Shown: piece by piece, positions 21,576 to 63,075 of the stretch | Numbering within the stretch: position 1 is the stretch's first letter | How the letters are laid out: every line of letters begins with the position of its first letter | Assembly: GCA_002269645.1 (NCBI GenBank) | Contig: NIVC01001803.1 | Span: 121,941 to 185,940 of the forward strand | Direction: 5' to 3' | Length of the DNA stretch: 64,000 nucleotides | Source of the DNA: Macrostomum lignano | Taxonomy: Eukaryota | Program-made: the position numbers and the translations under genes | Notes under the pieces: generated by a model | Databases searched by the model: none | The model's input: the letters and a program-made list of their open reading frames with translations, nothing else | What the model was told of the DNA's origin: nothing

Positions 21576-23334
21576 TTAACGCCAAGCGGGTTGGTACTGC
21601 TGGTACTGCTGCTGTTGCTGCTGCTGCTGTTGTTGTTGGTGCAGAAGATTCCTCAGAGCAGCCGCTTGCTGCTGTTGTTGCTGAGCAGCGTACATCTGCT
21701 GCTGCTGTGACTGCATCGGCTGCTGCAGGTTCACCACCAGCTTGTCCAGCATGCAGTTCAGATCAGCTGTGGTGGCTCTCTGCTGCTGCTGCTGCTGCTG
21801 CTGCTGATGAGGATGCTGCTGCTGTTGCCATAGCAACTGCAGATGGTAGCTGTGAGCCTCGGCCACGTGGCGGCCGAGATCGCGCCTGTGCCGATTGGCA
21901 GCCGGACAGCCGAAGCTGGCGAAGGGGCAGAGCACCAGGGTGAGCGGGCACGCGCGGTCCACGTGCTCGTGCAGGCGCTGATGGCCGGCCAGCACCCGGC
22001 CGCAGCGGTGCGGACACGGCATGGGGAAATTGGAGCAGCCGAACAGGTAGTGAAAGTTCAGCTGCCGGTAGGGCACCGAGGCGGAGCAGAACACGCAGGC
22101 CACCTGGCGCTCCCGGCAGGCCGCTCGGTGGGCGGCTAAGTCGCAGCGGCGGATGCGGGACTGCGGGATGATCGGCGGGGTGCTGGGTGTACATTGGGTG
22201 CCGGGTGTACATTGGGTGCTGGGTGTACACTGGTGCTGGGTGTACATTGGGTGCCGGGTTTACATTGGGTGCCGGGTGTACATTGGATGCCGGGTGTACA
22301 TTGGATGCCATGTGTACATTGGGATGGGTGCCCGGTGTACATTGGGTGCCGGGTTTACATTGGGTGCCGGGTGTACATTGGATGCCATGTGTACATTGGG
22401 ATAGGTGCCCGGTGTACATTGGGTACCGGGTGTACATTGGGTGCCGGGTGTACATTGGGTGCCGGGTGCACATTGGATGCCAGGTGCACATTGGGTGCCG
22501 GGTGTACATTGGGTGCCGGGTGCACATTGGATGCCAGGTGTAGATTGGGTGCAATGATTCACACTGGGTGCTTGCATGTGCATAATTATGCACACTTGGG
22601 AGGCTACAGGTGCGGATATTTGAGAGCACAATCAAGTACTGGAAACTAAATCCAGCTGGACTGTCGGGTGTACACTGGGCTGAATAGACACGCTGTGGAC
22701 TCACCTGGCACTGCTCGGGGCAGAGCTCCTCCACGAACTGGCAGGCAGTAGCCAGGTGCGATCTCAGGCCGCCCAGCTCCATGGCGGCGCCGCAGCCGGT
22801 GCGCGGGCATCGGACCGTCAGCTGCTGGACCTCGCGCTCCGTGGCCAGATCGTTGAACACGCCAGCGGTCAGGCCGCCGCGGCCAGCAGCCGACGGCCCG
22901 ACGTCGAGAATCGGCGAGCGGCACAGCGGGCAGGCGCGGCGGGCGCCGACAGAGGCTGGGCTTGCGGCGGCGGCAGCTGCTGCTGCTGCGGCTGCCGAAG
23001 CTGGCAGAGGCTGCTGGAACTGATGATGCTGCTGGTGGTGATGAAGGTGCAGGTGCTGATGGTGCAGCTGGAGCGCCGGCTGGACTGTTGAAGCTGCCCC
23101 GGAGGTGGTGGTGGAGGCAGCGGCGGCCGCGGCTGCAGAGAAGAAGCAGCCTCGGCAGAAGCGGTGACCGCAGCAGGTCTGCAGCGGCGACTTCAAGTGT
23201 CCGAGGCAGATGGGGCACTTCAGCCTGTCCGGCAGGGCGCTGACAAAGTCCGGCTCGTCAGGCTCTGCGGGCTCGCTGGCGCTGAGGCCAGCGACGGCCA
23301 CGGCGGCTGGGGGAGCTGGCGATGCTGATGGGAG
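21576..23334 (-). CDS. TRAF-family (TRAF6-like) RING + TRAF zinc-finger protein; 5' end unresolved, no MATH domain seen
   Basis: Exon 23334-22705: DFVSALPDRLKCPICL..L..P.QT.CGHRFC..C ... CPLCR, FNDLATEREV..L.V.CP..GC. Phase-0 GT-AG intron 22704-22161. Exon 22160-21576: CPEQCQ|SRIRRCDLAAH...C..RQVAC.FC, CPHRC, CP...V.CPF...GC; Q-rich tail; TAA. Confidence 0.88.
22175..22550. repeat. 18-bp intronic minisatellite (gtgtacattgggtgccgg)
   Basis: Fills the TRAF intron. Confidence 0.95.
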
Positions 23335-23372
23335 CTGCGGGAATGCGTGGGAGTGGCTGCGGTTTGTAGGGC

Positions 23373-23900
23373 ACTGACACTGACTGCTGACACTTGTCTC
23401 TATGCTGACACTAATTGCTGACACTTGACCCCATGCTGACACTGACTTCTGACACTTGTCCCTATGCTGACACTGATTGCTGACACTTGTGCCTATGCTG
23501 ACACTGACTGCTGACACTTATCCCTATGCTGACACTGACTGCTTACACTTATCCCTATGCTGACACTGACTGCTGACACGCGTCTCTATGCTGACACTGA
23601 TTGCTGACACGCGTCTCTATGCTGACACTGATTGCTGACACTTGACCCTATGCTGACACTGATTGCTGACACTTGTCTCTATGCTGACACTAATTGCTGA
23701 CACTTGACCTTATGCTGACACTAACTGCTGACACGCATCTCTATGCTGACACTGACTGCTGACACTTACCCCTATGCTGACACTGACTGCTGACACTTAC
23801 CCCTATGCTGACACTGACTGCTGACACTACTTATCCCTATGCTGACACCAACTGCTGACACGTGTCTCTATGCTGATACTTATCCCTACACTGACAAAAA
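23373..23900. repeat. ~31-bp minisatellite (ctgacactgactgctgacacttatccctatg)
   Basis: Direct reading; begins ~40 bp upstream of the TRAF acceptor. Confidence 0.93.
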
Positions 23901-25036: not shown

Positions 25037-39402
<14,366 letters not shown>

Positions 39403-41114: not shown

Positions 41115-43530
41115 ATGAGCCTAAGTAATAGCCCGAGGTTACCAGTGGCTTGGAATGAAGACTGGCTAGAGCGCATTGATAACAATGGCAAAAAGATTGG
41201 CATCTGGGCAAAGAAGCTCAACAGCGAGAGTAGCACAGTGCGCTGCAACTGGTGTGCCAAAACTTTTGAAATAAAAAGTTGACTGACCAACTTTAGAAGC
41301 CACGCAGAGGCTGGCAAACATAAAAAGATTTTGTCCAGCAGAAAGAACTGCACTTCACTGCTGGTGGTGACTCAAACCCAAACTGATGTTGAAGGTGCTG
41401 CTGAAGCCAGCTCAGGCAATACATTTGCTTCAACTACATTAGACACAAGCAGTACAATTGCTGATACATGGGCAGCTGAAATTGGATATGTTACAAGACT
41501 TATAATCAAGGCACACAGCTTCGAATCAGAAGATCTCACTGAGAATATTGCTGCAATTTGTCGAGATTCAAAGATTCCTCCCCGTATGCAGCTCCATGAA
41601 AGCAAGATTGCTTATCTCCTTTAGGATGCATTGTTTCTATACATCAGAGAAGTAGTGCTGCAAGAGATCCGCACAGCTAAATGGTTCTCGCTCCAAATCA
41701 ATGAGGCTAATAAAGGATCCAAATACCTTGGAGTAGTTGCCCGCTTCCTGCCCAGCTTGTCTTTTGACGTTAAAGTGGTCTGCATTGACTTGTGTAAGTT
41801 AAAGTCTACAACAGCAGAGGCAATGGCGACTTCCATCCATCAGTCAATGTTGGAGTGTAGAATCAATAGCAACAACTGTCTCTCTATTATGAGTGACAGT
41901 TATAATGCTATGTGTGGTGTCAAGAGTGGTACAGTTGTTAGGCTAAAAACCAACGGGTTTCCTAACATAATCAATCTAGGAGGCTGTTCCTTACACCATA
42001 TCACTAACGTGGCTAGATATGCCTGTGGTTCTTCAGACCTTGGAATGTCAATAGAACACTTGCTTAAGGAGATCTACGCCTTCTTTAAGATAGTGCAATT
42101 GGATGGTTTTGATGACATTCTAGCTGACAGCTTCTGTGAGATAAAGAAGCTCGCATTCCTCAGACCTGTGGACACCTGGTGGCTCTAAGTGCTGCCTATC
42201 CTTGAACAAGTGCTCTATCTATATGCACCAATTGATAAGTTTTTTTTGGAACTGAACATCAAGAGTAGGGACTCAGGGCTGCACACTGGTACCATAAAAA
42301 GGCCCTAAGAGATCCAAAGACTGAGTTCTTTCTTTGCTTCTTAGTCAAGGTTTTGCAGCCACTTTAGCATTTTGAGCTTCTTTTCCAGCAGGAAAGCTCC
42401 TAGCTCCACATCCTACACATTCAAATGCTAGACTTGATAAAGTGCTAGCTGATGCAATTTGTAGATTTGGCCAAGCTTTCCAAGTGGCATCCATGGAAAG
42501 TCAACTTGGATGATCCAGCTGTCTGGCTAGGGCCCTATAGCATTAGGATGGGTGAGCCAGCAAAGGGATTGTTTGTTGACATGAGTGCTAACGACTAGCA
42601 AGTGTGTCTTTAAGCAATGAAAAAATTCTTCCAAGTTGGAACTGAAAAACTAAGGGACTACTTGCCCTTCAAGAGTAAGTTCGTCAAAGCCTGAAAATGC
42701 TGGATCTGAAGGAGCAGTGTAATTTATTGTATGTTAAGTGGGTTACAACCCTTGCGGCGGAAATGTAATTTGCTTTCACTGACATGGAGATTGGCAATGT
42801 GGAAGTTGAGGTATGTCTACACCAGATAGAGATTCTAGAGTTAGAGTTGTCAAATGTTATTGAGCTTTGGGAGTCTGTATCTAAGGCTAGTAATCATCCT
42901 CTATCAGATTTGTCAAAGCACTTCTTATTCTCCCACATGGGAATGCTGAATTTGAGTGAGTCTTGAGTCTGGTTTATGGTTTGGGACACAGTTACTAAGA
43001 AGCAAATGAGTTCGGCACCCTTCACTGTCAAGGCCTTAAGTTAATTGTCACTTGTTCCTGTTTGTCTATAAAGAAATAGACTGCTGCAAATCTGCCCGTC
43101 ACCTTAGCTCTCTGAACATGTGCGCAAGTGCTCATTTGGCATACTGACAGAGACTGAAGGATAAGGCAGCAGAAGCAAAGTGAGAGCGCTATAAAAAGCT
43201 AACGAAAGGGGTGCTCACTAAAGTGGAGGCAAAAAAGAAAGCTAGCAAGCAATTCAGCTCTTTGCAAATGGATGTTTCAAATGCAATGGAAATTAGGGAA
43301 AAAAAGAAGAGTGTTGCACTTCTGTTGCTTAAAGAAGCTTAGTAGAAAGCAGAGATGCACGAAAATGAGCTTGAAGAGCTTCGAAAGGCGAAGGATCATA
43401 TTTGGAAAAGGAATGAAGAAGAGTTAGAGCGAATTATGCAATTAGTTTTAAAGAGGAAGACTGCTGAGCTGGCAGCTATGACACCTTTGCTTGCATCTAT
43501 TGCCCAGAAAAAGTTTCAACGTGACTGACT
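41115..43530 (+). pseudogene. Decayed hAT transposase
   Basis: N-terminal zinc finger (W...W...C.WC...H). WFSLQINE (first catalytic D now N), SDS.NAM.G.K.G, CSLH (CxxH), TWWL (from TRWL), and PHGNAEFE (dimerisation domain) across a frameshift. Many stops. Confidence 0.88.
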
Positions 43531-43639
43531 TGACTAATCCTTTGCATTAATATAGACTGTAGTAGGCCCTAGTAGGTAGCAGGACTCATTGACAGTTGAC
43601 ACTCTACTTATTTAAGCTGTTTTTTTATGAGTGTAACAT

Positions 43640-43975
43640 ACACCGCACGTTATTACGCATGTTATTCCGCATGCTATTCCGCACGTCATTCCGCACGTTC
43701 CGCTAGTTATTCCGCATGTTCTGCATATTGTTCCGCACGGTATTCCGCACGTTATTCCGCACATTATTCCGCATGTTATTCCGTACGTTATTCCGCACGT
43801 TTTTCCGCACGTTATTCCGTACGTTATTCCGCACGTTATTCCGCACTATATTCCGTACGTTATTCCGCACGTTATTCCGCACGTTATTCCGCATGTTATT
43901 CCGGACGTTATTCCGCACATTATTCCGCACGTTATTCCGCTCCGCATGTTATTCCGTACGTTATTCCGCACATTA
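43640..43975 (+). repeat. Left foldback arm: 12-bp array (ttattccgcacg)
   Basis: Direct reading. Confidence 0.95.
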
Positions 43976-44108
43976 GTCCGCACATCTACTTTTTAAACAT
44001 ATTCCCCACCATTAATTAAGCTATTTCTAGTTTAACTTACATGTCCGATACATGATTTCCACGAAAAAACGTGAAGATATAGTTTTAATAAGTATAACGA
44101 TATGCATA

Positions 44109-44468
44109 GGGGGGGCGTAGCCCAGCGGTAGCGCAGCTGCTCTGGTGTGCCAGTGACCCAGGCTCGATTCCAAGTACAGTCACATTAGTTTGGGGCTGAA
44201 TTGGAATCTCGGCTTGGCTATGCTCGTGCAATTAACGGCCTTGAGAGCCAACCCTCCACGGCGCAGTGAAGTGTACATGCCTAACGATAATATAAAGTTA
44301 GGGCCGCTGTACACTCCTGTGTGATTGTGTGCCTGCGTACGTATCCGCGCGCTTGTATGCCTGCTCAGGGGAGTCGGCGGAATGGGCAGTAATGCCTCTC
44401 ACCGGTTGTGTGCCTATGTCGCTTAAAGTGCGCCAGGGTGCACACCCCCCTGCCTCTAATAAAAAAAT
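44109..44468 (+). mobile_element. tRNA-derived SINE
   Basis: Head with A box (GGCGTAGCCCAGCGGTAG) and B box (GGCTCGATTCC). Tail aataaaaaaa. 10-bp TSD GATATGCATA at 44099-44108 and 44469-44478. Confidence 0.8.
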
Positions 44469-45197
44469 GATATGCATAAAATGCGAAGGTAAAAATAATG
44501 CGTCATTAGCTAAATGCTTTTAGAGCATAATTAAAGCAGAATTACATGCATATTTAAAGATTTTCTTACTTTTGGTTCATTTTGTTATAACTTTTAGCAA
44601 CTACGCAGATTTTTGAAAAACGTTCTCTTATTGCTACCCGAACAATCACTACACGCGACCTGCTGCGGAACTTAGTAGTTCAAATGTACCTTACAATATA
44701 TGGTTATATGGCCTGGTCAAATAGGCATAGGCTCATTGAATTTTTTCTATTCATTCCAATTTTGAATTGGCTATAGGCAAAATGAAGCCGTTACCATGCC
44801 ACCTACTACTGACAAAATAAGTTTTTACCTGCAATTGTTTGATGTATAGGTTTTTCATTTTGAGATATCGTAGTGTCATGACAAAACAAAATTCTAATTG
44901 ACAAGACAATTGATGATTTTGGATCTTTGAACCAAACTTACATATATTCAGCTATTTGTATAATATAGTCTGCCAAGTAGTGAACATATGTATAAATTCA
45001 GATGCTATTGACTTTATGAGCATGCTATTCTAATTTTTAAAACTTCCTGAATTTTTTGTTATTGAATTATTTCATAATTTTACTATGCTTGTTAATAAAT
45101 TGGCTCATATATTATGCATTCATTTCAGCCATTCCAGCCATTTAGCCCTCTTCAAGCAACAATTTAATTCTGGTCAATCTTTTGATTTCCTCAAGAT

Positions 45198-45563
45198 ATG
45201 TTTGCACCAGGTGCATTTAATGACGAGTATTTGGACGTCTTATTGGCTGCCTTGCTTGCTGCTCGTGTTGAAAATGTGGTCTTTTTTGGCTTACACATGG
45301 TCCATGCTTTTCTTAAAGGAGGCATGGCATCTTTGATTGTGCTGTCTGACTGTCTTGATGACGCCGAAAATAAGATTCTTGAAGAAATGTGCAAGAGGTG
45401 TGATGTACCCCTTACTACGATTCCGGCTGATAAATTCAATTTATTAAATCCTCCTAATGATGTGACCAATGCAGCCGTCATCAATCAAAATTTACTATCG
45501 ATGTCTAATAGAGAAGTTTTGTGCAAGGCCATTCGTGAATTAAAACGGCACACAGCCAAGTAA
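45198..45563 (+). CDS. L7Ae/L30e/S12e/Gadd45-fold protein, 121 aa, intronless, inside the MULE
   Basis: AALLAAR..NVVFFGLHMVHAFLKGGMASLIVLSDCLD...ILEEMCKRCDVPL follows the family pattern (helix-G, basic/Gly loop, L-I-V-L strand, helix ending C...VP). By eye it aligns with L30e G.K..LK.L..GKAKLVILA.NC and S12e GIREAAKAL...AHLCVLASNCD. Confidence 0.7.
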   Translation: MFAPGAFNDEYLDVLLAALLAARVENVVFFGLHMVHAFLKGGMASLIVLSDCLDDAENKILEEMCKRCDVPLTTIPADKFNLLNPPNDVTNAAVINQNLLSMSNREVLCKAIRELKRHTAK

Positions 45564-46094
45564 GTCAAGTTACCTAGATTCTAAAAGCTTGCTACGAGGA
45601 AGGCAAGTGTTGTTACTTAAAAATAAATGGGAATCCCCGGCCGTCTCAGTGCCAATGAATCGGCATCCTGCAGCCTAAAAATCTTTATTCCATATGCTTG
45701 CCTTTTTTGAAAATCTTACCTCGAAATTATAACATTTCTATGCTACACCATCGTTCCACGTACTTATTAAAACCATTTTTACACGGGCCTTCCTTTTTTC
45801 TTGTGGCTATTATATATATAACTTACTGTAAATAACCTTGTTGTAACTCTACATGGAATTTGTGGGAATTTTTTTAAGTTACAATAGTATTAGATTTTTA
45901 AACGAATTTTACTAACGACACAAATAAGTTTTCATACATTCAAGCCAAAATAAGCCCTATTTAAATTATTTAAGGAATATACATGTACATTTCTTCCCGA
46001 AACTACCAGACCACGCGATAACGCAGCTGGCGCCTCTGCTTCCGGTTCAGCGGCTGCCTCCCATGCTTTTGATCGCAATGCAGCTCAGAATTTG

Positions 46095-49000
46095 ATGGAC
46101 TTTGCTACTACTCCTGGAACTACCAATCCCACGACTGAGTCTGGTGCCAATGAAACTGCTGCTCCCGAGTCTCAATCCGCGGCCTTTGAGACTACAAAGT
46201 TATTGGCCACAGAGGTTGGTGTGCGGATGTACGAGCGTAGCATTTTTTGCAACTAATTTTCATTTAAAATAAACGATTTCATTTGCTATTCTTAAGAAAA
46301 TCTTTTGTTTTTTAGTACAGTTATATTTTGCGACTCAATCTTGAAACTTTTGTAATATTATTTGGTTCTCTTTCGTCTCCCTATGTTAGGCTCGGTCGAT
46401 CAGCATCCCAGCAAACGTTTTCAAGCGGCACACTGAGGTGAAGGTGAAGGATGGAAAGGAGTGCATTGCCATGAAATCCTCATGGATAACGGAGGTTGTC
46501 CGACCGTTGCTTGCAGAAAGTGGTGAGCATTGCGCTGTGCATATCGACAAGCAGGTGCTGAGGCCCTACAAGAAAAGGAAAACTGCTGCTGCTTACTGGC
46601 TACGATTACGATGCGCTGAAGGGGGTGGCTGTCGCTGCAGTTTTATATTTGTATTCAACGAACTTCCGGTTAAAACTGATGCTGCACTTGCGTTTAGGAC
46701 CCAAGGAGAGCACGAAGGTCATGAAGCTTGTACCCCAAAGGAGAACATACGTCACCTGTGGCAACGCGGCTCATCCGAGGCCCGCGCCTTCGTTCAAGAA
46801 GAGGCAATGCAGCGCGGCGCTAGTGCAACTGAAATTTACGAGCAAAACGTAAGCAATTTTTTAAAAAAAGGTTGTTCTCTTTCTGCTGTGCGCCAGACTG
46901 TACACAGAGTGCGGTCGTCAGAAGATAAAGAGAACGACGAGATGAGAGATGTACTGAATCAGCGTCTTGATTGGCAAATCGCGATGCCGAGAAGCAAGCG
47001 CGGTGTGGCTGGATTCATCCAGCATGTCTCTGCGGCGCCCATATCTGTTACACTCTATCGCACCGAACAGATGGAACTTTTACAAAGTGTTTTAAGAAAG
47101 GATCCGATGACTCCTATCCACCTTGATGCTACGGGAGGCCTTATTCGGCAATCTGCGGTTGTTCCAGCCAATGTCCTGTTTTGCAGTGCGGTTATTTCCG
47201 ATAGGAAGGGAAGCAACATTGTTGCTGTACCACTCACGGAAGCCATCTTAGAGATCACGCAAACGGAAAACGTCGCTCATTGGATTGATAACTTCCTTCT
47301 TAATTTTGCCCGCTTCCGAGACCGTGGGATCTGGGAAGCTGGCAGCAAAGGACCGCAGCTATACGTTAGTGATTGTAGTTGGGTTTTTATTCACGCTATT
47401 CTTCGCTCCGCCGCTTCGATGAATATCGGAGGATACCTAAAGACTCAGTTCAAGCGCCTGATTGGTAAAGACCCAGGCTCCTCCCCTGTGCCTATGATAT
47501 TTTTATGTACGTCCCACTTCATTAAGAGAGTCGCTCTAACGATTAGCATCAAGAAGTCACATGTTCGACAAACTTTTCTGCTTGCCTTTGCACAAATTAT
47601 CCTAGCTCCAACGGTAAAATCCGCAGTTATTACATGGAAACTTATGCTTTGTGTTTTTGGATCGCGGACAAAAACCAGTCAGTTTAAGAGTGCTTACAGG
47701 GATTTGCGTAAACTTGTAAATAAGCTACCCGAGGAGTACCACGAGACAGTTAAGTCTCTGCCTTTGGATGAAGAACTGTCCGCTGCACAAACCAAGCTGG
47801 GATGCCCTAGTTTTCGTCCTGCCACTCAAACCCTTCGCAATGAGTCACCTTTTGCGGCACTTTTTGACTGCACCGAAATCTCTGAAGAGTTGGGTACTCC
47901 AAATGAACTCTTTCAGTTTAGTGCCCTAAGAAAAGTGCATGCCTTGTGGCTTCCACTTCTGCCTCTGTGGAGCACATGCGTTTTTCAAGGAACGACTAAA
48001 AGCAACCAGCATTTTACTAACGCCCCTGTAGAGACGTGGTTCAGATGGATAAAGTCGCAATTGCTTCGTCAGCCGGGAGCTCGACTAAAACTAAATCGTT
48101 TCGTGCGATGCCACTTTCAGTGCGTCAAGCAGCGTTTAGACCGAGTCACACATGAAATGAAGCAGCAACATCTACCCCCTAAAATGGCACGCAAAAGGCA
48201 CGCTTTGAACGATGAAACGTCTGCACACGGCCCTATGGGTGATGGTTGGACCAAGGCTTCAAAGCGGGCTCGACGAAGCTACTTAAAAGGAACGCAGCTT
48301 TCTCCTCTGCCCAGCAGCGACGACGAAGTCAGCGACGACGGCAGCAATATATGCATTCACGGGGACGATACAGACACTGACAAGCAGTACAGCGTCGGCA
48401 ATAACAGAAAAGAATATGGTGAGGAGGAATACAAGCAGGACAGTGACGACGATGGCAATGATGAAGATGTAGACGGTGATGAGGAGGAATACAAGCAGGA
48501 CAGTGACGACGATGGCAACGAGGAAGATGTAGACGTTGATGAGGCGGAAGACAAGCAGGACAGTGACGATGATGGCAATGAGGAAGATGTAGACATTGAT
48601 GAGGCGGAAATCAAGCAGGACAGTGACGATGATGGCAACAAGGAAGATGTAGACGGTGATGAGGCGGAAGACAAGCAGGACAGTGACGACGATGGCAACG
48701 AGGAAGATGTAGATGGTGATGAGGCGGAAGACAAGCAGGACAGTGACGACGATGGCAACGAGGAAGATGTAGACGGTGGCGAGACAGACCCATGCAAGTA
48801 TGACAGCAACAAAAGCGGCAATGAAGGGAGTGGCGACGGAAATGGTAACCAGGATGGTCGCTCCAATCAAGTAAAGAAATCACAGATAAAGAAGAAACCT
48901 AAAGAGCCAAAAATTTCGCGTTCGGCTTTAGTCCACTGTTTTACAACAGTAGGAAATCATGGATCATTCATTATTCGTCGTTTTGACCGGGATTCCTTGC

Positions 49001-51063
49001 TTAGGAAAGACTCGTGGATCAGCGCCAACGTAAGTTTACTTTAATTTTATCTGCTATATGTGCATCGATTTTTGCACTTTTTAATGCTCTCCGCTCTAAA
49101 GACGGTAATGTGTATGCAGCTTGGCGATAGTATGTTGAGTTCAACCGGTGAGTTTGTACTGGTTTTGTAGTGCGCAGAAAGTAAACTTTAAAATATTTGT
49201 CTTTTGCTAAGAGTTAGTAACATATTATACTCATAGATATAACTATATCGTATAGACCTTATGTGGGAACAAGACCAATTTATAAATAAAGGACACTACT
49301 AATACTGTGTCGGACAACACATCAGAATGCATGTCAAATAATTATTGCAATACACGTGTTTGTACAATAAAAAGGCATGTTAGGGATCGTTTCATTGGGC
49401 AGGGATGAAAATTTAACTATCGGCTTCTTATTTTTCAGTCCTCATATCAGAGTCAGCGCATGAATTTCGCTACTCATATTTTACAAGCGTTTACTTCATT
49501 AACCATTAGCGATCCCCTTGCGGAACCCAAAAATTTACAGGTTGTCAACGCTATTATTGCCGCCTTTGCCTCGGAGTGGGATGGATGTATTCCTCTTCTA
49601 AATTACGAAGTTGATCAGTTGCGGCAAGGCGAAGGTGCTATTACGGATGCACTTCTACGTAAGCTAGGCAAGGTAAGGTATTAAACTTGTTTAAGTACGT
49701 CGCACTCCGTACGTAAAGAATTTTAGTATGTCGACACTTGAATTTTAGCTTTTTTAGTTTAAAAATTTTTTAATACTAGAATTTTAGTTTTTACACCAAG
49801 AAAACGATAGGTACCATACACACCGCGTGAAAAAGTACATTCAGCAATTGAGTCACAGAAATCATATAAATTGCTCTTTGCTACACGCGTACCAAATAAA
49901 GGCGATTAGTTATATAACCCAACTTTTTGTCGCCATTGAAGGCTACCACCTCAATGATCGGATTGATTCATCAGAGCCATCACTTCATGCTACTTTACAT
50001 CAACATTTGCGATGGTTTCGTGTCGGTTCTGGATCTGCTGCAATGCTACGAGGACCTCAGCGTCTGCTTCTGCGCCAACCTAAAGTGAGCTGCAATGTTA
50101 TGTACCCATATTTCCCACATTACGCTCGTAATTTCTATAGCCACCAGCACCTTGCCTTTTCGTATTTTTTAAGCAAAATGTTTTAATGTCCTCAAAATTA
50201 ACTCTCCTGTCCAGTTCACTACGGCATGCTTTTCAATGGCGAAGAATGAAGCCTCTGCAGCTGCACCATTCGGTGCAGCAGGACGGCTCCAGCTGCGGCT
50301 TACTGGTTTCGCTTTTTGCGCAACGAATTGTCGCAAGACAATCTTTGCTTGTCTCCACAAGTTCGAAAGCTGTTTTGCAGTACCGCCTCGTCGTCTGGCG
50401 TAATCTACTAAATTTTGCACCAAATTCAGCCGAACTATGTTGGCATTGTGGCGAAGACCAGGTGGCCAAAAATGCCGCGAAATGAAAAAAGCTCGACAGA
50501 TGGGTAAGAAATGAAGTACTGAAATACTAAGTTAAGAAATCGGGCTTTAACCATAATTCATTTCTGATATTCTAACCGCATCACACTACTTCCTACGGAT
50601 ACCTATAGTAATGTTTCGGTTTTGATTTTTTGACAGCAAGTTATGGGAGTGGGGTGAAATAATTTTCTAGCAGGAGTTTTCAGCTTTTAAATCTATGGCA
50701 GCAGAACTAGCTACTACGGGAGGCTACGGGGGTGGAGCTGCAAAAATAGATGCGAAAGGCTAATGGTTAAGCTAAAAAAGCCAAATTTATATCAAAATTT
50801 GTCCTCCCAACTGACAGTAAGACAGGTCAAAGACGATTGACGGCCACAATTTGACCGCCCTTCTATTCAAGGTGAATGGGGTAGCGGTCAAATTTTGTCG
50901 GTTAATTTTTGGTTTCCCCCGTAAAACCAATTTGTATGTACCAAAGGAAAACGTGTTTTTTCAGATAGAGTGCGACGCATGCAATCGGTGGTTTCATCAG
51001 GCATGCGTCCGTGTTACTCAAGTTCCAAAGAATTGGTGCTGCGAATTTTGCCGCAAGGAGTAG
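46095..51063 (+). CDS. NOF-like MULE transposase - acidic repeat - Ulp1 (C48) protease - PHD finger; spliced, with one in-frame TGA at 50483-50485
   Basis: Exons (inferred) 46095-46214, 46390-49029, 49439-49672, 49942-50084, 50215-50503, 50965-51063, phases consistent. CxxxxxC..HxxH N-terminal finger; HLDATG (D), YVSDCS (D), LCTSH (CxxH), TNAPVETWF (E). HHFMLLY..VLD and QQDGSSCG form a C48-type triad. CWHC..W|IECDAC.RWFH.AC..W.CEFC is a PHD. The join across 49030-49438 is uncertain. Confidence 0.8.
48420..48780 (+). repeat. Coding 60-bp repeat (EAEDKQDSDDDGNEEDVDGD x6)
   Basis: Translation of ORF 46438..49044. Confidence 0.95.
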
Positions 51064-52117
51064 CTAGCCGCGTAACAACTGCAAGCATGCCTATATTTCT
51101 TTAAACTTACTTGAATTGTGTAATTATACAATTATGCCATTATCGTCAAATGTCATTCAGAAAGTCTAGAAAATTAAGACTTCTTAGAACAAAGAACTAA
51201 GAACAAAAGAAAAGTAAAAGGTATTGTAGCACGATATACGTACAGCTGTAAAATGTGAAAAAGCGTGCATTGAACGCAAAAGCGTGCTAAAATGGCTCGT
51301 GATTGCGTATTATTGCAAACTGTGTCATTCAATTAATGCATGAGAAATACCGGGTGGCGCATAAGTATACACCACGACATGGACTAAAGTTTAAATGGGG
51401 ATTACTACTACTCAATACTTGGTTTCCTAGCTTATGTTTGGTACTCAAAACCGCCAAAGTATTGAAAATAAATATCCATCCACCAAATCCTACATGTATA
51501 TCTAAAATGGTTTGTCGGTATTTATACTATCTATCTATAAATGCCGGTTCTCTCAATTCAACTTATTAACTGCTCTGTTTCTTTGATTTAAATTTGCTCA
51601 TTTGTGTATTTTGTTTTCATTTTTCGCCAGTTAATTAACCTATGTGGGTTTTTAAACATTAGTATGTTTTGTTCAAGTTTTTTAACCATTACATTAGTTT
51701 TTTTATTCACATGGTGTTAGGACTTATTAAAATTTATTAAAGCGTAAACTTCTTTCAGCATCAAAGACCACTTTATTTTGCGTCCTGTAGTGACCTTGTA
51801 CATGTATGATGTGATTCTTTCATTAATATATGTTGATAAGTAGTCACTCTTCTCTTCTTTTTCTCTAACCTCTCCGCGACCCCGCCTCTGTGCATGCAAC
51901 TCTGAACTCAACTTACAACTCTGCAACTACAGTTACTCTGTTGCAGTCAATTTATATAATTTTACGAATGGCATGTACTCGCAATCCAGGAAAATATAAC
52001 GACAAGCTAATGTACATGTAGGCTTTCGCTTTACATTTAAAATGTATAAAAAATTGAAAAATTACTTGTAAATTTTATACAGAACATCGTGGAAAAATGC
52101 TTATAGTAACATGCGAA

Positions 52118-52340
52118 ATAAAGTGCGGAATAACGTGCGGAATAACTTACGGAATAACGTGCGGAATAACTTGCGGAATAACATGCGGAATAACGTGCGG
52201 AATAACTTGCGGAATAACATGCGGAATAACGTGCGGAATAACTTACGGAATAACATGCGAAGTACCGTGCGGAATTACGTACGGAAAAACATGCGGAGTA
52301 CCGTGCGGAATAACGTATGGAATAACATGCGGCGTAAGTT
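52118..52340 (-). repeat. Right foldback arm: 12-bp array (cgtgcggaataa)
   Basis: Reverse complement of the left-arm unit. Confidence 0.95.
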
Positions 52341-55137
52341 ATTCACGTCTGTTTTTTACCTAAGCAGTTGAAAAGCTGCTTAATGAGTTAAAAATTAAAA
52401 TTAAAATTAAATTAAATCTCTACTCAAATTATTTTCAAAGTAAATAAGATTTTATTTACTTTGAAAATTCTGCCCATGATATGCCCCTTGGACTGTATAG
52501 TAAACATTTGTTCACTTATCTCTTATAAAAGTTGTTTTGTGACTAAAAAGACAGTAGACCTGAAGATGGCCCTAGCCTAGTTGGACCAAAACATGTCAAA
52601 AGAATAGCATTATAATATAATCTATGTTGATTTTCACTTTTATATTTCTTTGCCTTCTAAAGCATGCCACCTTACCTGAATAAAAGCACAATTTACGTGG
52701 TACCATGCGAATATTGAGTGCCCCAATTCTAATATTAAATAAATAGGCCCTAAAGATTTAGACACCCAACAAAACAAAAGGTAAAAGCAGAGCAGCAATT
52801 GCACATTAGACTAGATTTCATTATTCTAAGTAGCTATTGACCTACTGGTTTAAATAAAACGAAAATTAAATTCATCTTAGCCATATAAATATCATGTTAG
52901 GCCAGGCCAGCTAGGCCAGAGAACTTCATTTTTCATTCTAAGTAAAACTATCACAAAATGCTAGATTTAACTGAATTTTAATTAAAATGATGGCTCAGTA
53001 CTGGCATAAAGTTTGTCGGTTACTTGACACTTGTAAAAATTGCTTAACATAAATTATACAATTATTAGTCCAACTTTAAGTGTAATGTGTAACATGCAGC
53101 GCCCTGCCTCAATCTGTGTGTGTCTCTATTTTATAATAAGAATACTTTGAAGTTCATGGAAAAAAATTACTTTTTCAAATTTAAATATAAAACATAAAAA
53201 TGGTAAGCGTCTAAACAAAGCTACGTAGAGTTAAAAGCGGCTTTAAGCTAATCGCATGTTTTTGTGGTGATAGCAAAGTTTAAAAAAACATTTTTAACTT
53301 TTTATATGGCATTTAATATAAACAAATACATGAAATGAAAAGTTGTGACGCAGCGGTAGAAACCGGTAGATAGCATTTTTTGTTGTCAAGATATTAACGA
53401 AATGCTTGATTAGACCCTGTTAATCATCTCAACCACTCTTGTCTGGCGAGTTTGATATGTTATGATTTGTATGACTATACACATATTTTTATACGTTGGT
53501 TTTGTCTTTAATTCTTTTAAACTATTGTAGGCTGTTCGTGTTAGGCCTAGTTAGTTCTACTAGGGGCCTACGCCGCCTACTGTCAGTGTCAAGTGTCAAG
53601 GCCTCATTGACTAGGCCCTAGGGGCGATCAGGCAAACTAGGGCCTATACCGCTAATCAGAGACAGGCTCTAGATACGCATTTTAATACATATACACATAC
53701 AGCATAACAACAACTATATTATGCTGATTAGCATACATAGGCCTACTTATACCTACAGTATACTATATTACTATATCAAAACATGCTAATATGGGTAGGC
53801 CTACAACTATTACTATATACGCCTAACAAAACATAAAACAGCCTAATCGACCATAGATTAAAAAAACAATACCATGACCATGATTTTGAGATAGGCTACA
53901 CTAGGCCTATTAGTATTAGACTAAATTTGCATTTAATTAATTACAAATAAATAGGCCTAGCCTAGGCCATATGAAATTCTATTGGCTTAGCTATATCTAA
54001 AATTAGGCTATTATTAAGCTATTATTATCAAAATTTATATATTAGGCCTACTTTATAGTCACTTTCTTATGATATCTTATGGGAGCTTCTGCTGGGCATC
54101 ATGGGCGGCAAGAGCTTGCTTGTGGCACTAGGGGCATATCCTTATGCCCCCCTCTCCCAGAAAATGAGTCCACAGACCACATGTTAATTTTTAGTGCTTT
54201 TTCTGATTTTAGGCCCTTATTAGCAGCCTATAAAGGTACCTGTGCCCCCCTTGCCCTGTCTGTACCCAGTGCCCCTCCCCCTAAAATATTAGGCTCTGCT
54301 ACCTCTGCTAGGTAGGCCTATATCAATTGAAGGCTGAAGCTAATCTGGCAATGGTAATAGTATCTTACCTATGGTCTCATAGGTCCTAGTTGATTATAGA
54401 AGAAACAATGGCCAGGTTTTGGTTCAAGCCTACTTATTGAATCTATGTCTTTTTAAATTTGGTTTGGCATTAGCTACAATGTTTACTTCTACTAATCTCG
54501 CTTGGTCTCTAGGCTTTAGGCTTATATTTGTAAAGATTATTATCAAAACAAAGACAAAATGACTAGGCACTCTAAGTCTAATAATATTTTTACTTTTAGC
54601 TTTTATTCATATCTTTTGTTTCTGTGCTTTATTCACTTTGTACTCATTTGATACTTCTTTGTCAAATATATTAATATTAAAAGTTATTTTTTCTATTGTT
54701 CATTCTATGCTTACTCTCTTTTAGAATATTTAAATTTGTAAATGTTGTATTAATGGTATGCTAGCTCTTGTGCTAGAAAAGAAATAATCAGCCTTTGGGG
54801 CTACAACTTACTTATCTATATATTTGAGCATAGCTAAGCCATAGATATAAAATAAGCATTTGCATTTGCATTTGTTAAGAATACAATAGTAAATAGTTCT
54901 TTTTTATATTCTTTTTTAATTCACTAAGCTTTTTGCTCTTGAATTGCTGTTCAAGCCCCTATTAGATTAGTGGGCAAAGGTATCTGACTATCCATCATAA
55001 TTTTAATATTCTAGTGTCACAACTAGAGTCAAAGTAGATACTATTGCAATGAAGTAATACATTTTGGCCCTGAAAGTTTTAATCTAGTTCAAATGTACTT
55101 CCAACTAATGAATGCACTCCAACTAGCAAAAGCTAAA

Positions 55138-56082: not shown

Positions 56083-58449
56083 CAGCCAGGTAAATCCTTA
56101 GGTTGCTCCCAAGCATGGTCTCAGCCAATGAAAAGTATTTATTAAGTAGGGTTTCTATATTTACTCTAATAGGGGTTCAAGCAAAATGAGCCAGTTTTGA
56201 ATGTCTTCTCTAGGAGTGTATTTTTCAAATTTCTCATCCCCTTTTGTCAATTTCTTTTAGCAAGTTTGCAATTATTATGCTGGCTTCTACCTCAATAGGT
56301 ATACTTGTTTTATCTTTTGCAAGCCTATTAAATGCCACTAAGTTGTACAAGTGCTTAGGTAATAAGATAGGTTCAGGTTGATTGCATATACAGTGATTAT
56401 ACAGTTGCACTACTTATGCTATAATAGAAAAAATTGAAAACTAAGAATTGATATTTTGTTTCTCTACTCTTCTTTTCTATTACAAATAGCATAGCATAGC
56501 TAAATAGCATAATTTACTTCAATGTATAACAATGTCAAGTTTTTGTGTACCATGACAATAAGAAGAATAAAAAGATTGTAGCAACCATATAGCAAGTCTA
56601 TAAGAAGTGAACCAGCTATCTGTGAAAACATGATAGCCTAGGCAAAGAAAAATATGGCAAAGCTAAGCTATGCCACAACCTTCATTTGTAGACAAATTTT
56701 GATAGCCCAGTCTATCATCAAACAATTGGTTGGCTTCAATTGATATGAGAATCTGAAATTTCCATAGGTAGGTCAATAAGACTAGACAAGACTTGAAATC
56801 TCTAGCTATTGGCTATACAGTTTAGCTTTTCACTTGTGCACTTCTTGCTAAGCCTTGTTGTCTTCTTAGAGACAGATTCAAGTAGAGCTTAATCTTATTT
56901 GCATCTTGATGATTGCATTCAGGCTCTGGATAAGGGATCCCTTGGCTAAGATATAGGCTTTATAAGTAGTTATATACCAATAAGTCTTATGCTATACAAA
57001 GGAAGACTGCTGTTCATGCAATATATCCTAATGAAGAGGAACAAGTATAGAATCCAGATGCACTGTCTCTGCAACTCCAACATAGCAAAATAATTCCAAT
57101 CAGTTTTCCCATATTAACTATGTATTCCTAGTTCAGCACATATGTTGGACTATTCTGCTTGATACAATTACTTTTCTTTCTGTTCACAATCTTAGGATGT
57201 TGCAAATTGGGTCTAACTTTTGATACGCAAGAGAAACTCAGACAGGTACTAGCCTGACATCAGTGATATCTTCAACAAGATGCCATAGTTCTCATATCTT
57301 ATCACTGTTCTTTTTCCTGGTCACTGGGAATGTTCAACTTTAGATCCATCAATTTGCTCATTAACTGCAGTGAACCAGCTTATATCTAATTCTCTATTAA
57401 GATCTAATGTGGAGCTAACTGCTATCTAGAATGGGAGAAAAGTAAAAATTCTATATATAATACATTCACTTGGCAAAAGGTGTGACAGTTTTTTGGTTTG
57501 TTGCATAGATGTTAAAATGGTTCTTGTTATAAAACTTTACAAAGCAGTAGTTATATTGGAATTTAAAGAAATAGGAATTAGTACTATTTTTACCTAATTT
57601 TGGATTGTTATATATAATCCCTGAAATTATATGTGACTAGGTTTTGATTTAAGAATTCTATTCAGTTCTTCAAATTATTCAAAACAATCTAAAAATTCTT
57701 CAATTTATTGTCAAATTCCTAAAAAAATAAATCTTTTTATGACTTACTCTTTGTCTATTACAATTATATTAGCTGGATTTGCTAGGTCTGCTAGTAGTCA
57801 TGCATATATGTTGAAGATATTATTACCTACTTTGCCAATTGACTTGCTGCAACATTGTCACTTGCACTAGCAAGATAAATCATAAATAAACTAAAAGTCA
57901 TAAAATTTGTGGCTTACCCTGATCTACCACAATCATGCTAGTTAGTTTGGCTTGTCAAATAGCAGTTGTGCCTATATGTTGAAATTAGTTTTTTTATTTT
58001 AGTTTCTATAGGCCTTAGCAATGCATAGAAATGTATTCACATAGCTTAAGCTTATTTGCTGTATAATTATTCCCTTATTGGCTGGCAGTTTACAGAATTG
58101 TAAGGTACATTATTACCCTAGGTAATGTAGCTTGTATTCTTACTGCATGTCTTGGTCTTCAGCTAATATAAAAATCATTTTAAAATTGTCCTGACATGTA
58201 TCTCAACTTCACGTTGGCATTATTTAAAAGTATTAATATTGATCTCATACTCTCATTAATTCTCAAATTTGAATAAAATTTATACTTTGTGTCTGCAGAC
58301 CAATTTTAAACTTGGATTGGATTGATTGATGCCGGTTTTGAATTTAGCTATGTAGCTGGCATGCTATACAGAGCGGAAAGCTCTCAGTGCTACTGGATAT
58401 TGAAGGCTTTGAACTTTGAAACCTTAAAAATGTATGTACCTTGCAGGCC

Positions 58450-59468
58450 ATGCGGCGGAAGCCAGTCATCTCGCTGCGCGGCCCCGTGCCGCGGCCGCCG
58501 CCGTCTCCGCCATCGCCGCTGGAGGAGCAGCCGCAGGACCAGCAGCAGCAGCCGCCGTCCCGATCCATCAGCCTTTTGCCGCGGCATTATGAAGCTAAAA
58601 AAGACACAGAGGCAAAATTTGATATCAGACACAGCAGTCTGCTGCTGCTCAGAGGCGGAGACAACGAGCTCAAGGACATCGACCAGGAGGACGAGGACGA
58701 TGATGAGGCCGACATTGACACGGGCGCCAGTGGCGGCGGCTGCTCCCTGGCGCCGCTCGACTTGTCAATCAAAGACGGCGCCGCGGGAAAAGGGTTTGCA
58801 TCGCCTCAGCCGGAGCCGCTGAGACCTTCACCATCCGCTGCCGGTGCCAGCGGAGCTTCTGCGGCCGCCACCCGCCTGGCCTGCACCGCCTGCGACCGAG
58901 AGTTCTTTGACCGGTCTACCCTGAACCGGCACGTGCGCACCGTGCACTCCGGCTGCAAGCCGCACCGCTGCGAACTCTGCGGCAAAGGCTTTGCTAGGGC
59001 AGATTATCTCAGGAAGCACTACACCACTCATGCGGCCGGCCAGGGCCTGACTGCGCAACGTGAGTTATTCTGTATTCTAGTTTCATTGACTGAAGCAGAT
59101 GCGCTTTGAGACGCAACTCGGTGATTGTACAGCGACTCTGACACGCCTCAACTATGTATTTTCATCGCGTGTATGATTTTTAGGCATTGTTTCTACCACT
59201 ACTTCTTTATATTTCTACTATAAGTAGCGCGATCAGGGCCTGAAACAGATGCATTTTTGTCGTTCGCATTTTAGCCGCAATTCAGCTGACGCCTCCGCCG
59301 CCGCCTCTGCATTCGCCAGCGGTTGCTCATCAGCAGCCTCAAAATCGGCAGCAGCAGCAGCAGCCACCGCCACCGCCGCCACTCAGCCCAGAAGTTGCTA
59401 ACGCATTGAAAGCGATCTGGTTGCAGCACAAGCTGTTGACTGCCGGTCCCAGTGCGCCACAATTGTAG
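58450..59468 (+). CDS. C2H2 zinc-finger protein (2 fingers) with PLDLS CtBP-binding motif, ~267 aa
   Basis: Exons 58450-59059 and 59275-59468 (phase-1 GT-AG intron, in frame to TAG). CTACDREF..RSTLNRHVRTVH-SGCKPHR-CELCGKGFARADYLRKHYTTH; APLDLS. Acceptor-like ccttgcag 3 nt before the ATG. Confidence 0.88.
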
Positions 59469-59562
59469 CTGTAGCCTGATGGAATGGAAATTGTAGTCTG
59501 TCAGATTGTCTACTCAGTCTGGGATTGCAGGCCTGTAGTTTCTGTTTGTCATTTTGTTTTTC

Positions 59563-59815
59563 TTCCTCAGTCCTTTGATCTGTGCCGCCAAGTCTAACCT
59601 TCCTCAGTCCTTTGATCTGTGCCGCCAAGTCTACCCTTAGTCCTTTGATCTTTGCCGGCAAGTCTAACCTTCCTCAGTCCTTTGATCTGTGCCGCCAAGT
59701 CCAACCTTCCTCAGTCCTTTGATCTGTGCCGCCAAGTCCACCCTTCCTCAGTCCTTTGATCTGTGCCGGCAAGTCCACCCTTCCTCAGTCCTTTGATCTG
59801 TGCCGCCAAGTCCCA
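59563..59815. repeat. 37-bp repeat (cctcagtcctttgatctgtgccgccaagtctaacctt), ~7 copies, in the probable 3' UTR
   Basis: Direct reading. Confidence 0.92.
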
Positions 59816-63003: not shown

Positions 63004-63075
63004 GGTTCGGTGGTGTAGTGGTTATCACATCTGTCTCACACACAGAAGGTCCCCGGTTCGAGCCCGGCCGAACCA
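63004..63075 (+). tRNA. trnV-CAC: tRNA-Val (CAC)
   Basis: Acceptor stem GGTTCGG/CCGAACC + A; D arm GTGTAGTGGTTATCAC; anticodon arm TCTGT-CTCACAC-ACAGA; GGTTCGAGC T loop; TTTTT terminator 4 nt downstream. The T-stem 3' strand is one G short. Confidence 0.92.

What the first reader, a model, noticed from the sequence alone, without database searches (positions are those of the whole stretch)
45198..45563. Transposon-borne L7Ae/L30e/S12e/Gadd45-fold gene
Seen: an intact, intronless 121-aa ORF between the left arm and the transposase, same strand, strongly diverged from ribosomal members (GLHMV where RNA-binding members usually have charged residues). Known: the fold includes kink-turn RNA binders (L7Ae, 15.5K, SBP2) and Gadd45, which is linked to stress signalling and DNA demethylation. 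Inference: a captured accessory factor, perhaps an anti-silencing or RNA-regulatory partner. Together with a deSUMOylase-like domain and a PHD reader, it could form a counter-defence kit against SUMO/chromatin silencing.
Basis: partly seen in the sequence, partly recalled or inferred. Interest (0 to 1): 0.85.

Follow-up and report, generated by a model that had tools for sequence, protein, structure and literature searches.

The report
Transposase first exon, L7Ae-like domain
The 121-codon reading frame is real and weakly resembles the L7Ae/L30e/eS12 protein family, but it is most likely the first coding exon of the transposon's own large transposase gene rather than a separate passenger gene, and its function is untested.

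Summary
The ORF at 45198-45563 (+) exists as described. It matches Pfam PF01248 (L7Ae/L30e/S12e/Gadd45) just above the curated threshold (23.9 vs 22.1 bits, E 3.3e-5). Ten reversed or shuffled controls gave nothing comparable. Its codon usage resembles the transposase exon (P about 0.01). The fold is not confirmed structurally: the AlphaFold model is useless (pLDDT 41) and no homologue of the domain was found anywhere.

The main correction concerns gene structure. The stop codon lies inside a perfect splice donor (CAA|GTAAGT), one of only three GTAAGT on that strand of the 8.7-kb element. Splicing from it gives a seven-exon, all GT-AG, in-frame gene of 1,281 aa: L7Ae-like domain, Ala/Ser/Thr linker, zinc-finger plus DDE transposase core, acidic repeats, SENP/Ulp1-like protease, PHD finger. 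Macrostomum lignano relatives conserve exons 3-7 and the intron positions but show no counterpart of exons 1-2. The N-terminal module therefore looks like a lineage-specific addition.

The element has a 9-bp target duplication, inverted 12-bp minisatellite arms and a PHD finger, so it resembles Mutator/Rehavkus elements. Ulp1 and PHD appendages are already known in transposases. The canonical K-turn RNA-binding residues are absent. The anti-silencing role is speculation.

The parts
43617..43625 (.). Left copy of the candidate 9-bp target-site duplication, CTGTTTTTT
   Evidence: The exact 9-mer recurs at 52349-52357, immediately outside the two arms. Random pairs of flanks share a 9-mer about 3.7% of the time.
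43626..52348 (+). The whole DNA transposon, about 8.7 kb, present as a single copy in the window
   Evidence: It is bounded by the TSD candidates and by inverted arms. No second copy is present in the window.
43643..43983 (.). Left subterminal arm: about 28 copies of a 12-bp unit (CCGCACGTTATT)
   Evidence: Tandem Repeats Finder. It is inverted relative to 52107-52332 with 82-89% complementarity.
44110..44450 (.). G+C-rich insert with a tRNA-like start (a possible SINE) in the element's 5' non-coding region; coordinates approximate
   Evidence: Read directly from the sequence. It is not called as a tRNA by ARAGORN or Rfam.
45198..45559 (+). Exon 1 (the finding): ATG plus 120 2/3 codons encoding the L7Ae/L30e/eS12-like domain. 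It ends at the donor CAA|GTAAGT. If intron 1 is retained, it reads AAG TAA and gives the 121-aa product.
   Evidence: Pfam PF01248 E 3.3e-5. Donor position and frame. Codon usage P 0.012. An in-frame stop lies four codons upstream of the ATG.
46010..46214 (+). Exon 2: 68-codon Ala/Ser/Thr-rich linker
   Evidence: In frame with exon 1 (phase 2) and exon 3 (phase 0), with AG and GT borders. GC is 0.54 against 0.30-0.33 in the flanking introns. Codon usage z 3.9, P 1e-4.
46390..49029 (+). Exon 3: putative C-x5-C...H-x2-H zinc finger, DDE-type transposase core (D...D...CxxH...TNxxExW..K) and the start of the protease domain. It ends at AAC|GTAAGT.
   Evidence: 42% identity over 641 aa to M. lignano PAA89924.1. 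25% identity to the Mercenaria protein P0006. Invariant residues are listed.
48420..48778 (+). Six copies of a 60-bp unit encoding a 20-aa acidic repeat, inside exon 3
   Evidence: Tandem Repeats Finder, 93% matches. M. lignano carries unrelated repeats at the same position.
49541..49672 (+). Exon 4: SENP/Ulp1-like domain, N-terminal part
   Evidence: Exon and intron position conserved in four M. lignano copies.
49942..50084 (+). Exon 5: SENP/Ulp1-like domain, His and Asp region
   Evidence: Conserved in M. lignano. Aligned to the SENP2 catalytic His and Asp.
50215..50461 (+). Exon 6: SENP/Ulp1-like Gln and Cys region, and the first half of the PHD finger
   Evidence: 40% identity to M. lignano. 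Two-species profile against SENP2, E 0.0046.
50947..51063 (+). Exon 7: second half of the PHD finger and stop codon TAG (an alternative acceptor is at 50965)
   Evidence: With this acceptor Pfam PHD covers profile positions 1-47. ALFIN-like PHD structures match at E 1.2e-4 across the exon 6|7 junction.
52107..52332 (.). Right subterminal arm: about 19 copies of the 12-bp unit in inverted orientation
52349..52357 (.). Right copy of the candidate 9-bp target-site duplication

Best explanation
The 121-codon ORF is the first coding exon of the transposase gene of an 8.7-kb Mutator/Rehavkus-like DNA transposon. After splicing (seven exons, all GT-AG) it forms the N-terminal domain of a 1,281-aa protein. 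The order of parts is a diverged L30e/L7Ae/eS12-like alpha/beta module, a flexible Ala/Ser/Thr linker, a zinc-finger DNA-binding region, the DDE catalytic core, acidic repeats, a SENP/Ulp1-like cysteine protease and a PHD finger. Shown: the ORF, the Pfam match, the splice-site geometry, the frame continuity, and the conservation of exons 3-7. Inferred: the module has lost the Asn/Glu/Lys residues that L7Ae-type proteins use to grip kink-turn RNA. It therefore most likely serves as a protein-protein or oligomerisation/regulatory module of the transposase rather than a classical K-turn binder. The intron begins GTAAGT in phase 2, so retaining intron 1 would end translation one codon later and give the free 121-aa domain. 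This could act as a truncated regulator, by analogy with transposon repressors made by intron retention. The module is absent from the closest relatives, so it was probably acquired by exon capture in this lineage.
For: The ORF and the Pfam PF01248 hit are above the gathering threshold, and shuffled controls are negative. The stop codon is embedded in CAA|GTAAGT. Only three GTAAGT occur on the + strand of the element, and two of them lie exactly at the ends of the two long ORFs, at 45560 and 49030. The exon 1-2-3 junctions are in frame, with an open 68-codon exon 2. Exons have GC 0.41-0.54 against 0.30-0.40 in introns. Exons 1 and 2 share the codon usage of exon 3, with P 0.012 and 1e-4. The region conserved with M. 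lignano starts at the first codon of exon 3, upstream of any Met in that exon, so translation must start in an upstream exon. The 3' exon model is validated by conserved exons and intron positions in four M. lignano copies, and by PHD and SENP matches that span exon junctions. An in-frame stop lies four codons before the ATG of exon 1, so exon 1 would be the first coding exon.
Against: There is no transcript evidence. No second copy or homologue shows the exon 1-2-3 arrangement. M. lignano copies have no detectable equivalent in their conserved upstream blocks, and neither does the clam relative. Exon 2 contains an in-frame ATG (..NLMDF..) that could start a transposase without exon 1. The exon 2 donor (GTTGGT) is weak. 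An AATAAA lies about 60 nt after the ORF's stop and could serve a separate small mRNA. The fold assignment is marginal: 23.9 bits, 60 of 95 profile positions. AlphaFold gave pLDDT 41, and hhalign against verified family members gave only P 0.015.
Confidence: 0.5

Rival explanations
1. One reading: the ORF is an independent, intronless accessory gene carried by the transposon. It makes a free 121-aa L7Ae/Gadd45-like protein that acts in trans, for example against host silencing.
For: The ORF has its own ATG in a purine -3 context, and a stop codon, with an AATAAA about 60 nt downstream. Exon 2 has an internal ATG that could start the transposase separately. The relatives' transposases appear to function without this module.
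Against: The stop codon coincides with one of only three GTAAGT hexamers on that strand of the element. The downstream exon is in the compatible phase and open. Under this view these would be coincidences, with a combined chance of roughly 1 in 100 or less. The two readings are not exclusive if intron 1 is sometimes retained.
Confidence: 0.15
2. Exon 1 is a real N-terminal coding exon, but the PF01248 match is a false positive and the domain has a different fold, for example helical or ankyrin-like.
For: The score is only 1.8 bits above threshold and covers 60 of 95 profile positions. An exhaustive phmmer search of 1.84 billion proteins returned only an ankyrin-repeat protein, at E 5e-5 summed over seven repeats. 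The AlphaFold single-sequence model was all-helical but of very low confidence. An HMM built from eS12 plus Gadd45 gave no signal.
Against: The Pfam E-value is 3.3e-5 and ten composition-matched controls gave nothing. The two top Pfam hits share one fold class. Most weak PDB hits are eS12 or eL8. No ankyrin Pfam model scored E<1, and the ankyrin score adds up seven weak repeat matches to one query segment.
Confidence: 0.2
3. The ORF is a non-functional relic. It would be a host gene fragment transduplicated into the element (Pack-MULE style), or a chance ORF that is still open only because this copy is young.
For: Mutator-like elements often capture host gene fragments (PMC6446971 abstract). 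The module is missing from relatives. Only one copy is available, so selection cannot be shown. Exon 1 has the lowest GC of all exons.
Against: The ORF is 121 codons open in 38% G+C DNA, with a start codon directly after an in-frame stop. It ends in a consensus donor, in a phase that continues into an open, codon-usage-matched exon. A random captured fragment would rarely have this arrangement. It is too diverged from eS12, eL30 and Gadd45 to be a recent capture of one of those genes.
Confidence: 0.15

Closest known systems
Pfam PF01248, the L7Ae/L30e/S12e/Gadd45 family (L30e-like alpha/beta fold); the nearest members by sequence are eukaryotic eS12 proteins
   Same: The HMM score is above the curated threshold. 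The aligned core is G-L-h-x-h...K-x-x-x-A-x-L-x-V-L...C...K-I/L-h-E-x-h-C-x-x-x-x-V/I-P-L, corresponding to beta1-alpha2-beta2-alpha3-beta3.
   Different: The Glu and Lys of the conserved helix, and the Asn-Glu-x-x-Lys K-turn-binding signature of L7Ae and 15.5K, are replaced by Met, Val and Ala. Only about 60% of the domain model is matched. No specific signal to Gadd45 was found. The domain is encoded in a transposon and probably fused to a transposase, which I found in no paper of the held library.
Rehavkus elements (Mutator-related DNA transposons, described in Repbase; summarised in PMC6446971)
   Same: [quoted passage not shown]
   Different: Here the minisatellites are at both ends and make up the inverted arms. 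The transposase also carries a SENP/Ulp1-like domain and the N-terminal L7Ae-like exon. Sequence relatedness to Rehavkus transposases could not be tested because Repbase was not available. Pfam MULE models do not hit.
Ulp1- and PHD-bearing transposases: Ginger1 (for example Ginger1-9_HM with Ulp1 + PHD) and Ulp1-containing Mutator elements of hydra, lancelet and plants (PMC2836005)
   Same: A C-terminal Ulp1-like cysteine protease followed by a PHD finger, fused to a DDE transposase and encoded by a multi-exon gene.
   Different: The catalytic core here is not integrase-like (no Ginger features). The protease is too diverged for Pfam PF02902 and is seen only by a two-species profile (SENP2, E 0.0046). 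None of those elements is reported with an L7Ae-like domain.
Macrostomum lignano hypothetical proteins BOX15_Mlig026520g2 / Mlig032215g2 (PAA89924.1, PAA65919.1) and Mercenaria mercenaria LOC128546961
   Same: The same unclassified transposase family. M. lignano is 42% identical over 641 aa, with the same Ulp1-like and PHD exons and the same intron positions. The clam protein is 25% identical in the core.
   Different: Neither has a detectable L7Ae-like exon. The clam model carries a USP/UCH (PF00443) domain instead, with a Peptidase_C48 gene next to it.

Membership tests
Pfam PF01248 Ribosomal_L7Ae/L30e/S12e/Gadd45 | Score against the family HMM at or above the curated gathering threshold | tested here: met
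   23.9 bits against 22.1, E 3.3e-5. 22.7 bits when exon 2 is appended. Ten reversed or shuffled controls gave no hit.
Pfam PF01248 Ribosomal_L7Ae/L30e/S12e/Gadd45 | Three-layer alpha/beta/alpha L30e-like fold | tested here: inconclusive
   The AlphaFold2 single-sequence model has mean pLDDT 41 and pTM 0.31, so it was unusable and no Foldseek search was run. No homologues were available to build an alignment.
Pfam PF01248 Ribosomal_L7Ae/L30e/S12e/Gadd45 | Similarity to verified members by profile comparison | tested here: inconclusive
   hhalign against seven verified members gave P 0.015 over residues 30-77. Shuffle tests gave P 0.01 (all seven), 0.005 (eL30/Snu13/NHP2) and 0.02 (eS12), and no signal for eS12+Gadd45.
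K-turn-binding L7Ae/15.5K/SBP2 subgroup | Conserved Asn-Glu-x-x-Lys helix and basic or hydrophobic loop residues that contact the kink-turn | tested here: not met
   The aligned helix reads G-L-H-M-V-H-A-F-L-K. The family-conserved Glu and Lys positions hold Met33 and Ala36 (alignments). The definition of the signature is from my own knowledge of L7Ae/15.5K structures.
Gadd45 | Specific sequence similarity to GADD45A/B/G, including the acidic loop region | tested here: not met
   An HMM of eS12 plus GADD45A/B/G scores the ORF no better than shuffles (3465 of 5000 shuffles score at least as high). No Gadd45 chain is among the PDB hits.
Mutator/Rehavkus-type DNA transposon | 9-bp (9-11 bp) target-site duplication | tested here: met
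   The exact 9-mer CTGTTTTTT abuts both ends. The chance is about 3.7% for random flank pairs, so this is suggestive rather than proof.
Mutator/Rehavkus-type DNA transposon | Long terminal inverted repeats, with a minisatellite near the terminus (Rehavkus) | tested here: met
   Inverted 12-bp arrays of about 340 and 226 bp, 82-89% complementary. The family description is from PMC6446971.
Mutator/Rehavkus-type DNA transposon | PHD finger in the transposase (Rehavkus) | tested here: met
   Pfam PHD at 22.6 bits, E 1.1e-4, just below the gathering score of 24. ALFIN-like PHD structures match at E 1.2e-4.
Mutator/Rehavkus-type DNA transposon | Transposase sequence related to MuDR/MULE or Rehavkus transposases | tested here: inconclusive
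   No Pfam MULE, Transposase_mut or SWIM hit and no PDB hit. Motif order D...D...CxxH...TNxxExW..K and a C-x5-C...H-x2-H finger are compatible with MULEs by eye. Repbase was not available for a direct comparison.
Ulp1/SENP (peptidase C48) | Catalytic His-Asp-(Gln)-Cys in order, in a papain-like core | tested here: met
   The two-species profile hits SENP2 at E 0.0046, and 6 of its 7 hits are SENP2 or SENP1, with His, Asp, Gln and Cys aligned. Pfam PF02902 itself is not hit.

The most novel reading that the evidence does not exclude
A DNA transposase has recruited a diverged L30e/L7Ae/Gadd45-fold module as its N-terminal domain, which is also released as a free 121-aa protein by intron retention. 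This module would bind RNA or chromatin and repair factors to protect the element from silencing, or to autoregulate its own mRNA. It would act together with the SUMO-protease-like and PHD domains of the same polypeptide. That would be a new class of transposase accessory domain.
Probability: 0.1. Interest if true: 0.7.

Novelty: new variant of a known kind. Interest (0 to 1): 0.4.

Why it matters
Transposases with C-terminal Ulp1 and PHD appendages are known, but their roles are still unclear. An additional N-terminal domain of the L7Ae/eS12 fold class has not been reported with a eukaryotic DNA transposase in the literature I could search. If it is real and functional, it would add an RNA- or protein-binding module to the known set of transposase accessory domains. 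It would also give a concrete case of exon capture by a Mutator-like element that can be tested by transposition assays with and without the domain. At present it rests on one copy and a marginal profile match, so it is a curiosity worth a follow-up in the source genome, not an established new system. Separately, the transposase family itself (window, Macrostomum, Mercenaria) matches no Pfam transposase model and appears to swap ubiquitin-like protease domains (Ulp1-like or USP), which may interest transposon taxonomists.

Tried and rejected
(1) Homologue searches with the 121-aa product. The k-mer/HMMER search of 5.8 billion proteins found nothing. Exhaustive phmmer over 1.84 billion representatives found only an ankyrin-repeat protein, whose score sums seven weak repeat matches; I rejected it as spurious. 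NCBIfam gave nothing.

(2) AlphaFold2 on the single sequence gave pLDDT 41, which is unusable, so I ran no Foldseek search. I did not run AlphaFold with an alignment of assumed remote homologues, because the result would be circular.

(3) I searched for the L7Ae-like exon upstream of the M. lignano transposases in four loci, with up to 10 kb upstream. There was no tblastn similarity and no long ORF in the conserved upstream blocks.

(4) Two weak collinear tblastn hits upstream of the clam homologue looked promising, but they lie in a roughly 170-bp tandem satellite. Rejected.

(5) Two metagenome-contig scans, one with the transposase profile and one with the ORF, found nothing.

(6) Exact-product look-ups for the ORF, the 868-aa and 857-aa forms of exon 3, and the 2,093-aa ORF were all not on record, so the source organism and other copies remain unknown.

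(7) Pfam on the spliced C-terminal part gave no Peptidase_C48 hit. The call was recovered only weakly, with a two-species profile against the PDB.

(8) The first codon-usage control was unfair, because its control windows contained stop codons. A stop-free shuffle version timed out. I replaced both with a stop-free random-ORF sampler.

(9) Rfam and ARAGORN found no structured RNA or tRNA in or near the element.

(10) Two of the nine reference sequences I recalled from memory (human SNU13 and M. jannaschii L7Ae) were not exact database matches, so I dropped them.

Full report
OBSERVATION

An ATG-to-TAA ORF of 121 codons lies at 45198-45563 on the + strand. It sits inside an element whose ends are marked by inverted arrays of a 12-bp unit, at 43643-43983 and 52107-52332 (82-89% complementary). 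It is 0.8 kb upstream of, and on the same strand as, an 868-codon ORF.

Against Pfam the product hits PF01248 (Ribosomal_L7Ae/L30e/S12e/Gadd45) at E 3.3e-5 and 23.9 bits. The curated cut-off is 22.1. The match covers residues 18-76 and profile positions 6-65 of 95. The next hit, SpoU_sub_bind (E 0.12), belongs to the same L30e-like fold class in SCOP, which I state from my own knowledge.

A phmmer search of all PDB sequences gives only weak hits, the best at E 0.05. Eleven of the 17 hits are eS12 or eL8/L7A ribosomal proteins. The reversed sequence and nine shuffles of the ORF gave no PF01248 hit and nothing better than E 0.03. The match is therefore more than composition would give, though it is marginal.

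HOW SOLID IS THE FOLD?

- The AlphaFold2 single-sequence model was useless (pLDDT 41).
- No homologue could be found to deepen the alignment. The 5.8-billion-protein search gave nothing.
- The exhaustive phmmer search of 1.84 billion representatives gave only an ankyrin-repeat protein. Its score sums seven weak matches of one query segment, and I regard it as spurious.
- I verified seven reference sequences by exact look-up: human eS12, GADD45A/B/G, eL30, NHP2 and yeast Snu13. hhalign of the ORF against their alignment gave P 0.015 over residues 30-77.
- HMMs built from subsets of these references scored the real ORF above all but 0.5-2% of 5,000 shuffles for three of the four sets. There was no signal for the eS12+Gadd45 set.

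I put the L30e-like fold at roughly 75%, with no specific link to Gadd45.

GENE STRUCTURE

This is the main correction. The ORF's last codons read ...GCC AAG TAA GTC, that is CAA|GTAAGT, a perfect 5' splice site. On the + strand of the 8.8-kb element there are only three GTAAGT hexamers. One is at 45560 (the end of this ORF), one at 49030 (the end of the 868-codon ORF) and one lies in the right array.

Splicing at 45559|45560 leaves phase 2. An acceptor at 46009|46010 opens a 68-codon Ala/Ser/Thr-rich exon in exactly the compatible frame. That exon ends at 46214 (GT). The strong acceptor at 46389|46390 then enters the long ORF in frame.

Continuing in the same way gives seven exons, all GT-AG, and one 1,281-aa product:

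- Exon 1: 45198-45559
- Exon 2: 46010-46214
- Exon 3: 46390-49029
- Exon 4: 49541-49672
- Exon 5: 49942-50084
- Exon 6: 50215-50461
- Exon 7: 50947-51063

Every exon is richer in G+C (0.41-0.54) than every intron (0.30-0.40). I compared each exon with stop-free random ORFs of the same base composition, scoring codon usage against exon 3. Exon 1 gives z 2.2 (P 0.012) and exon 2 gives z 3.9 (P 1e-4). The antisense and overlapping ORFs score no better than random.

VALIDATION FROM RELATIVES

The only close relative of the transposase is a set of Macrostomum lignano hypothetical proteins, 42% identical over 641 aa. All of those gene models are 5'-partial. They begin exactly where my exon 3 begins, upstream of any Met in that exon, so an upstream coding exon is required.

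Four M. lignano loci conserve the end of exon 3 and exons 4-7, with introns at the same positions in the protein. Amino-acid identity in these exons is 33-63%. ALFIN-like PHD structures align across the exon 6|7 junction at E 1.2e-4. A two-species profile of the region between the acidic repeats and the PHD finger hits SENP2 (E 0.0046) and SENP1, with the catalytic His, Asp, Gln and Cys aligned. The 3' part of the model is therefore well supported.

The 5' part, exons 1-2, rests on splice geometry, frame, composition and codon usage only. The M. lignano copies share conserved upstream blocks, but these contain no long ORF and nothing similar to exons 1-2. The distant clam relative (Mercenaria LOC128546961, 25% identity, with a USP/UCH domain) also lacks such an exon. 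Two weak hits upstream of it fall in a satellite. The N-terminal module therefore looks like a lineage-specific addition.

WHAT THE ELEMENT IS

An exact 9-mer, CTGTTTTTT, abuts both ends at 43617-43625 and 52349-52357. The chance of this for random flank pairs is about 3.7%. It delimits an 8,723-bp element.

A 9-bp duplication, long inverted ends, minisatellites next to the termini, one large transposase gene and a PHD finger are the published description of Rehavkus, a Mutator-related group (PMC6446971). The residues invariant between the window and M. lignano, which I also see by eye in the clam protein, follow the order D (LDATGG), D, CxxH, TNxxExW..K. They are preceded by a C-x5-C...H-x2-H pattern. 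By my reading this is Mutator-like.

No Pfam transposase model and no PDB sequence is hit, however. Repbase was not available, so membership is not established. Ulp1 and PHD domains at the C-terminus of transposases are already documented for Ginger1 and Mutator elements, and USP-type hydrolases have been seen with other transposases (PMC2836005). I found no paper linking an L7Ae-type domain to a eukaryotic DNA transposase.

MECHANISM (INFERENCE)

The most likely reading is that exon 1 encodes the N-terminal domain of the transposase. It would be joined by a flexible linker to the DNA-binding and catalytic parts. With its K-turn contacts lost, it would act as a protein-protein or regulatory module.

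Intron 1 starts GTAAGT in phase 2, so an unspliced message would terminate one codon into the intron and yield the free 121-aa domain. Nothing tested here bears on anti-silencing.

RIVAL READINGS

- A separate accessory gene.
- A real exon with a false-positive fold call.
- A non-functional captured fragment.

VERDICT

This is a new variant of a known kind, of moderate interest, limited by a single copy and a marginal profile match.

Noticed in passing
window 46390-49029; L001-L004 (M. lignano); L005 (Mercenaria): The transposase family matches no Pfam transposase model and no solved structure. In 5.8 billion proteins it has only flatworm and clam relatives. The flatworm and window versions carry a SENP/Ulp1-like domain plus a PHD finger. 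The clam gene model carries a USP/UCH domain and is followed by a Peptidase_C48 gene. This suggests swapping of ubiquitin-like protease modules.
   Followed up: partly
window 48420-48778; L001 6700-7700: Between the transposase core and the protease domain, the window has six 20-aa acidic repeats (60-bp unit). M. lignano has unrelated 10-aa repeats (TEIGQECAAT and AESAQPKRRM types) at the same place. A repetitive spacer seems to be a conserved architectural feature with unconserved sequence.
   Followed up: no
window 44110-44450: A G+C-rich insert of about 340 bp with a tRNA-like 5' end (GGGGCGTAGCCCAGCGGTAGCGC...) lies in the element's 5' non-coding region. It is possibly a SINE. ARAGORN and Rfam do not call it.
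   Followed up: partly
window 8279-14560 (-): A single uninterrupted 2,093-codon ORF with highly repetitive content (Pfam DUF6342, summed E 7.6e-56, no individually significant stretch). It is unusual for animal DNA, and its exact product is not on record.
   Followed up: partly
window 6114-7082 (-): An ORF with QRICH1 and DUF3504 domains (E about 7e-10 each). From my own knowledge this combination is associated with Crypton-derived genes.
   Followed up: no
window 41331-42188 (+): Two adjacent ORFs just upstream of the element have no significant Pfam match. They may be remains of another mobile element.
   Followed up: no
window 38002-38244, 38644-38848, 59562-59813: Three minisatellites, with 35-bp, 32/62-bp and 37-bp units at 89-97% identity, flank the region.
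   Followed up: no
window 63004-63075 (+): A tRNA gene (Rfam RF00005, 56.8 bits). It is the only Rfam family match in the window.
   Followed up: no
window 21763-23517 (-), 28257-29483 (-), 58441-59109 (+): ORFs with RING (C3HC4), TPR/MLP1 and C2H2 zinc-finger domains. These confirm an animal host genome with strongly varying G+C (0.31-0.60 per 2 kb).
   Followed up: no
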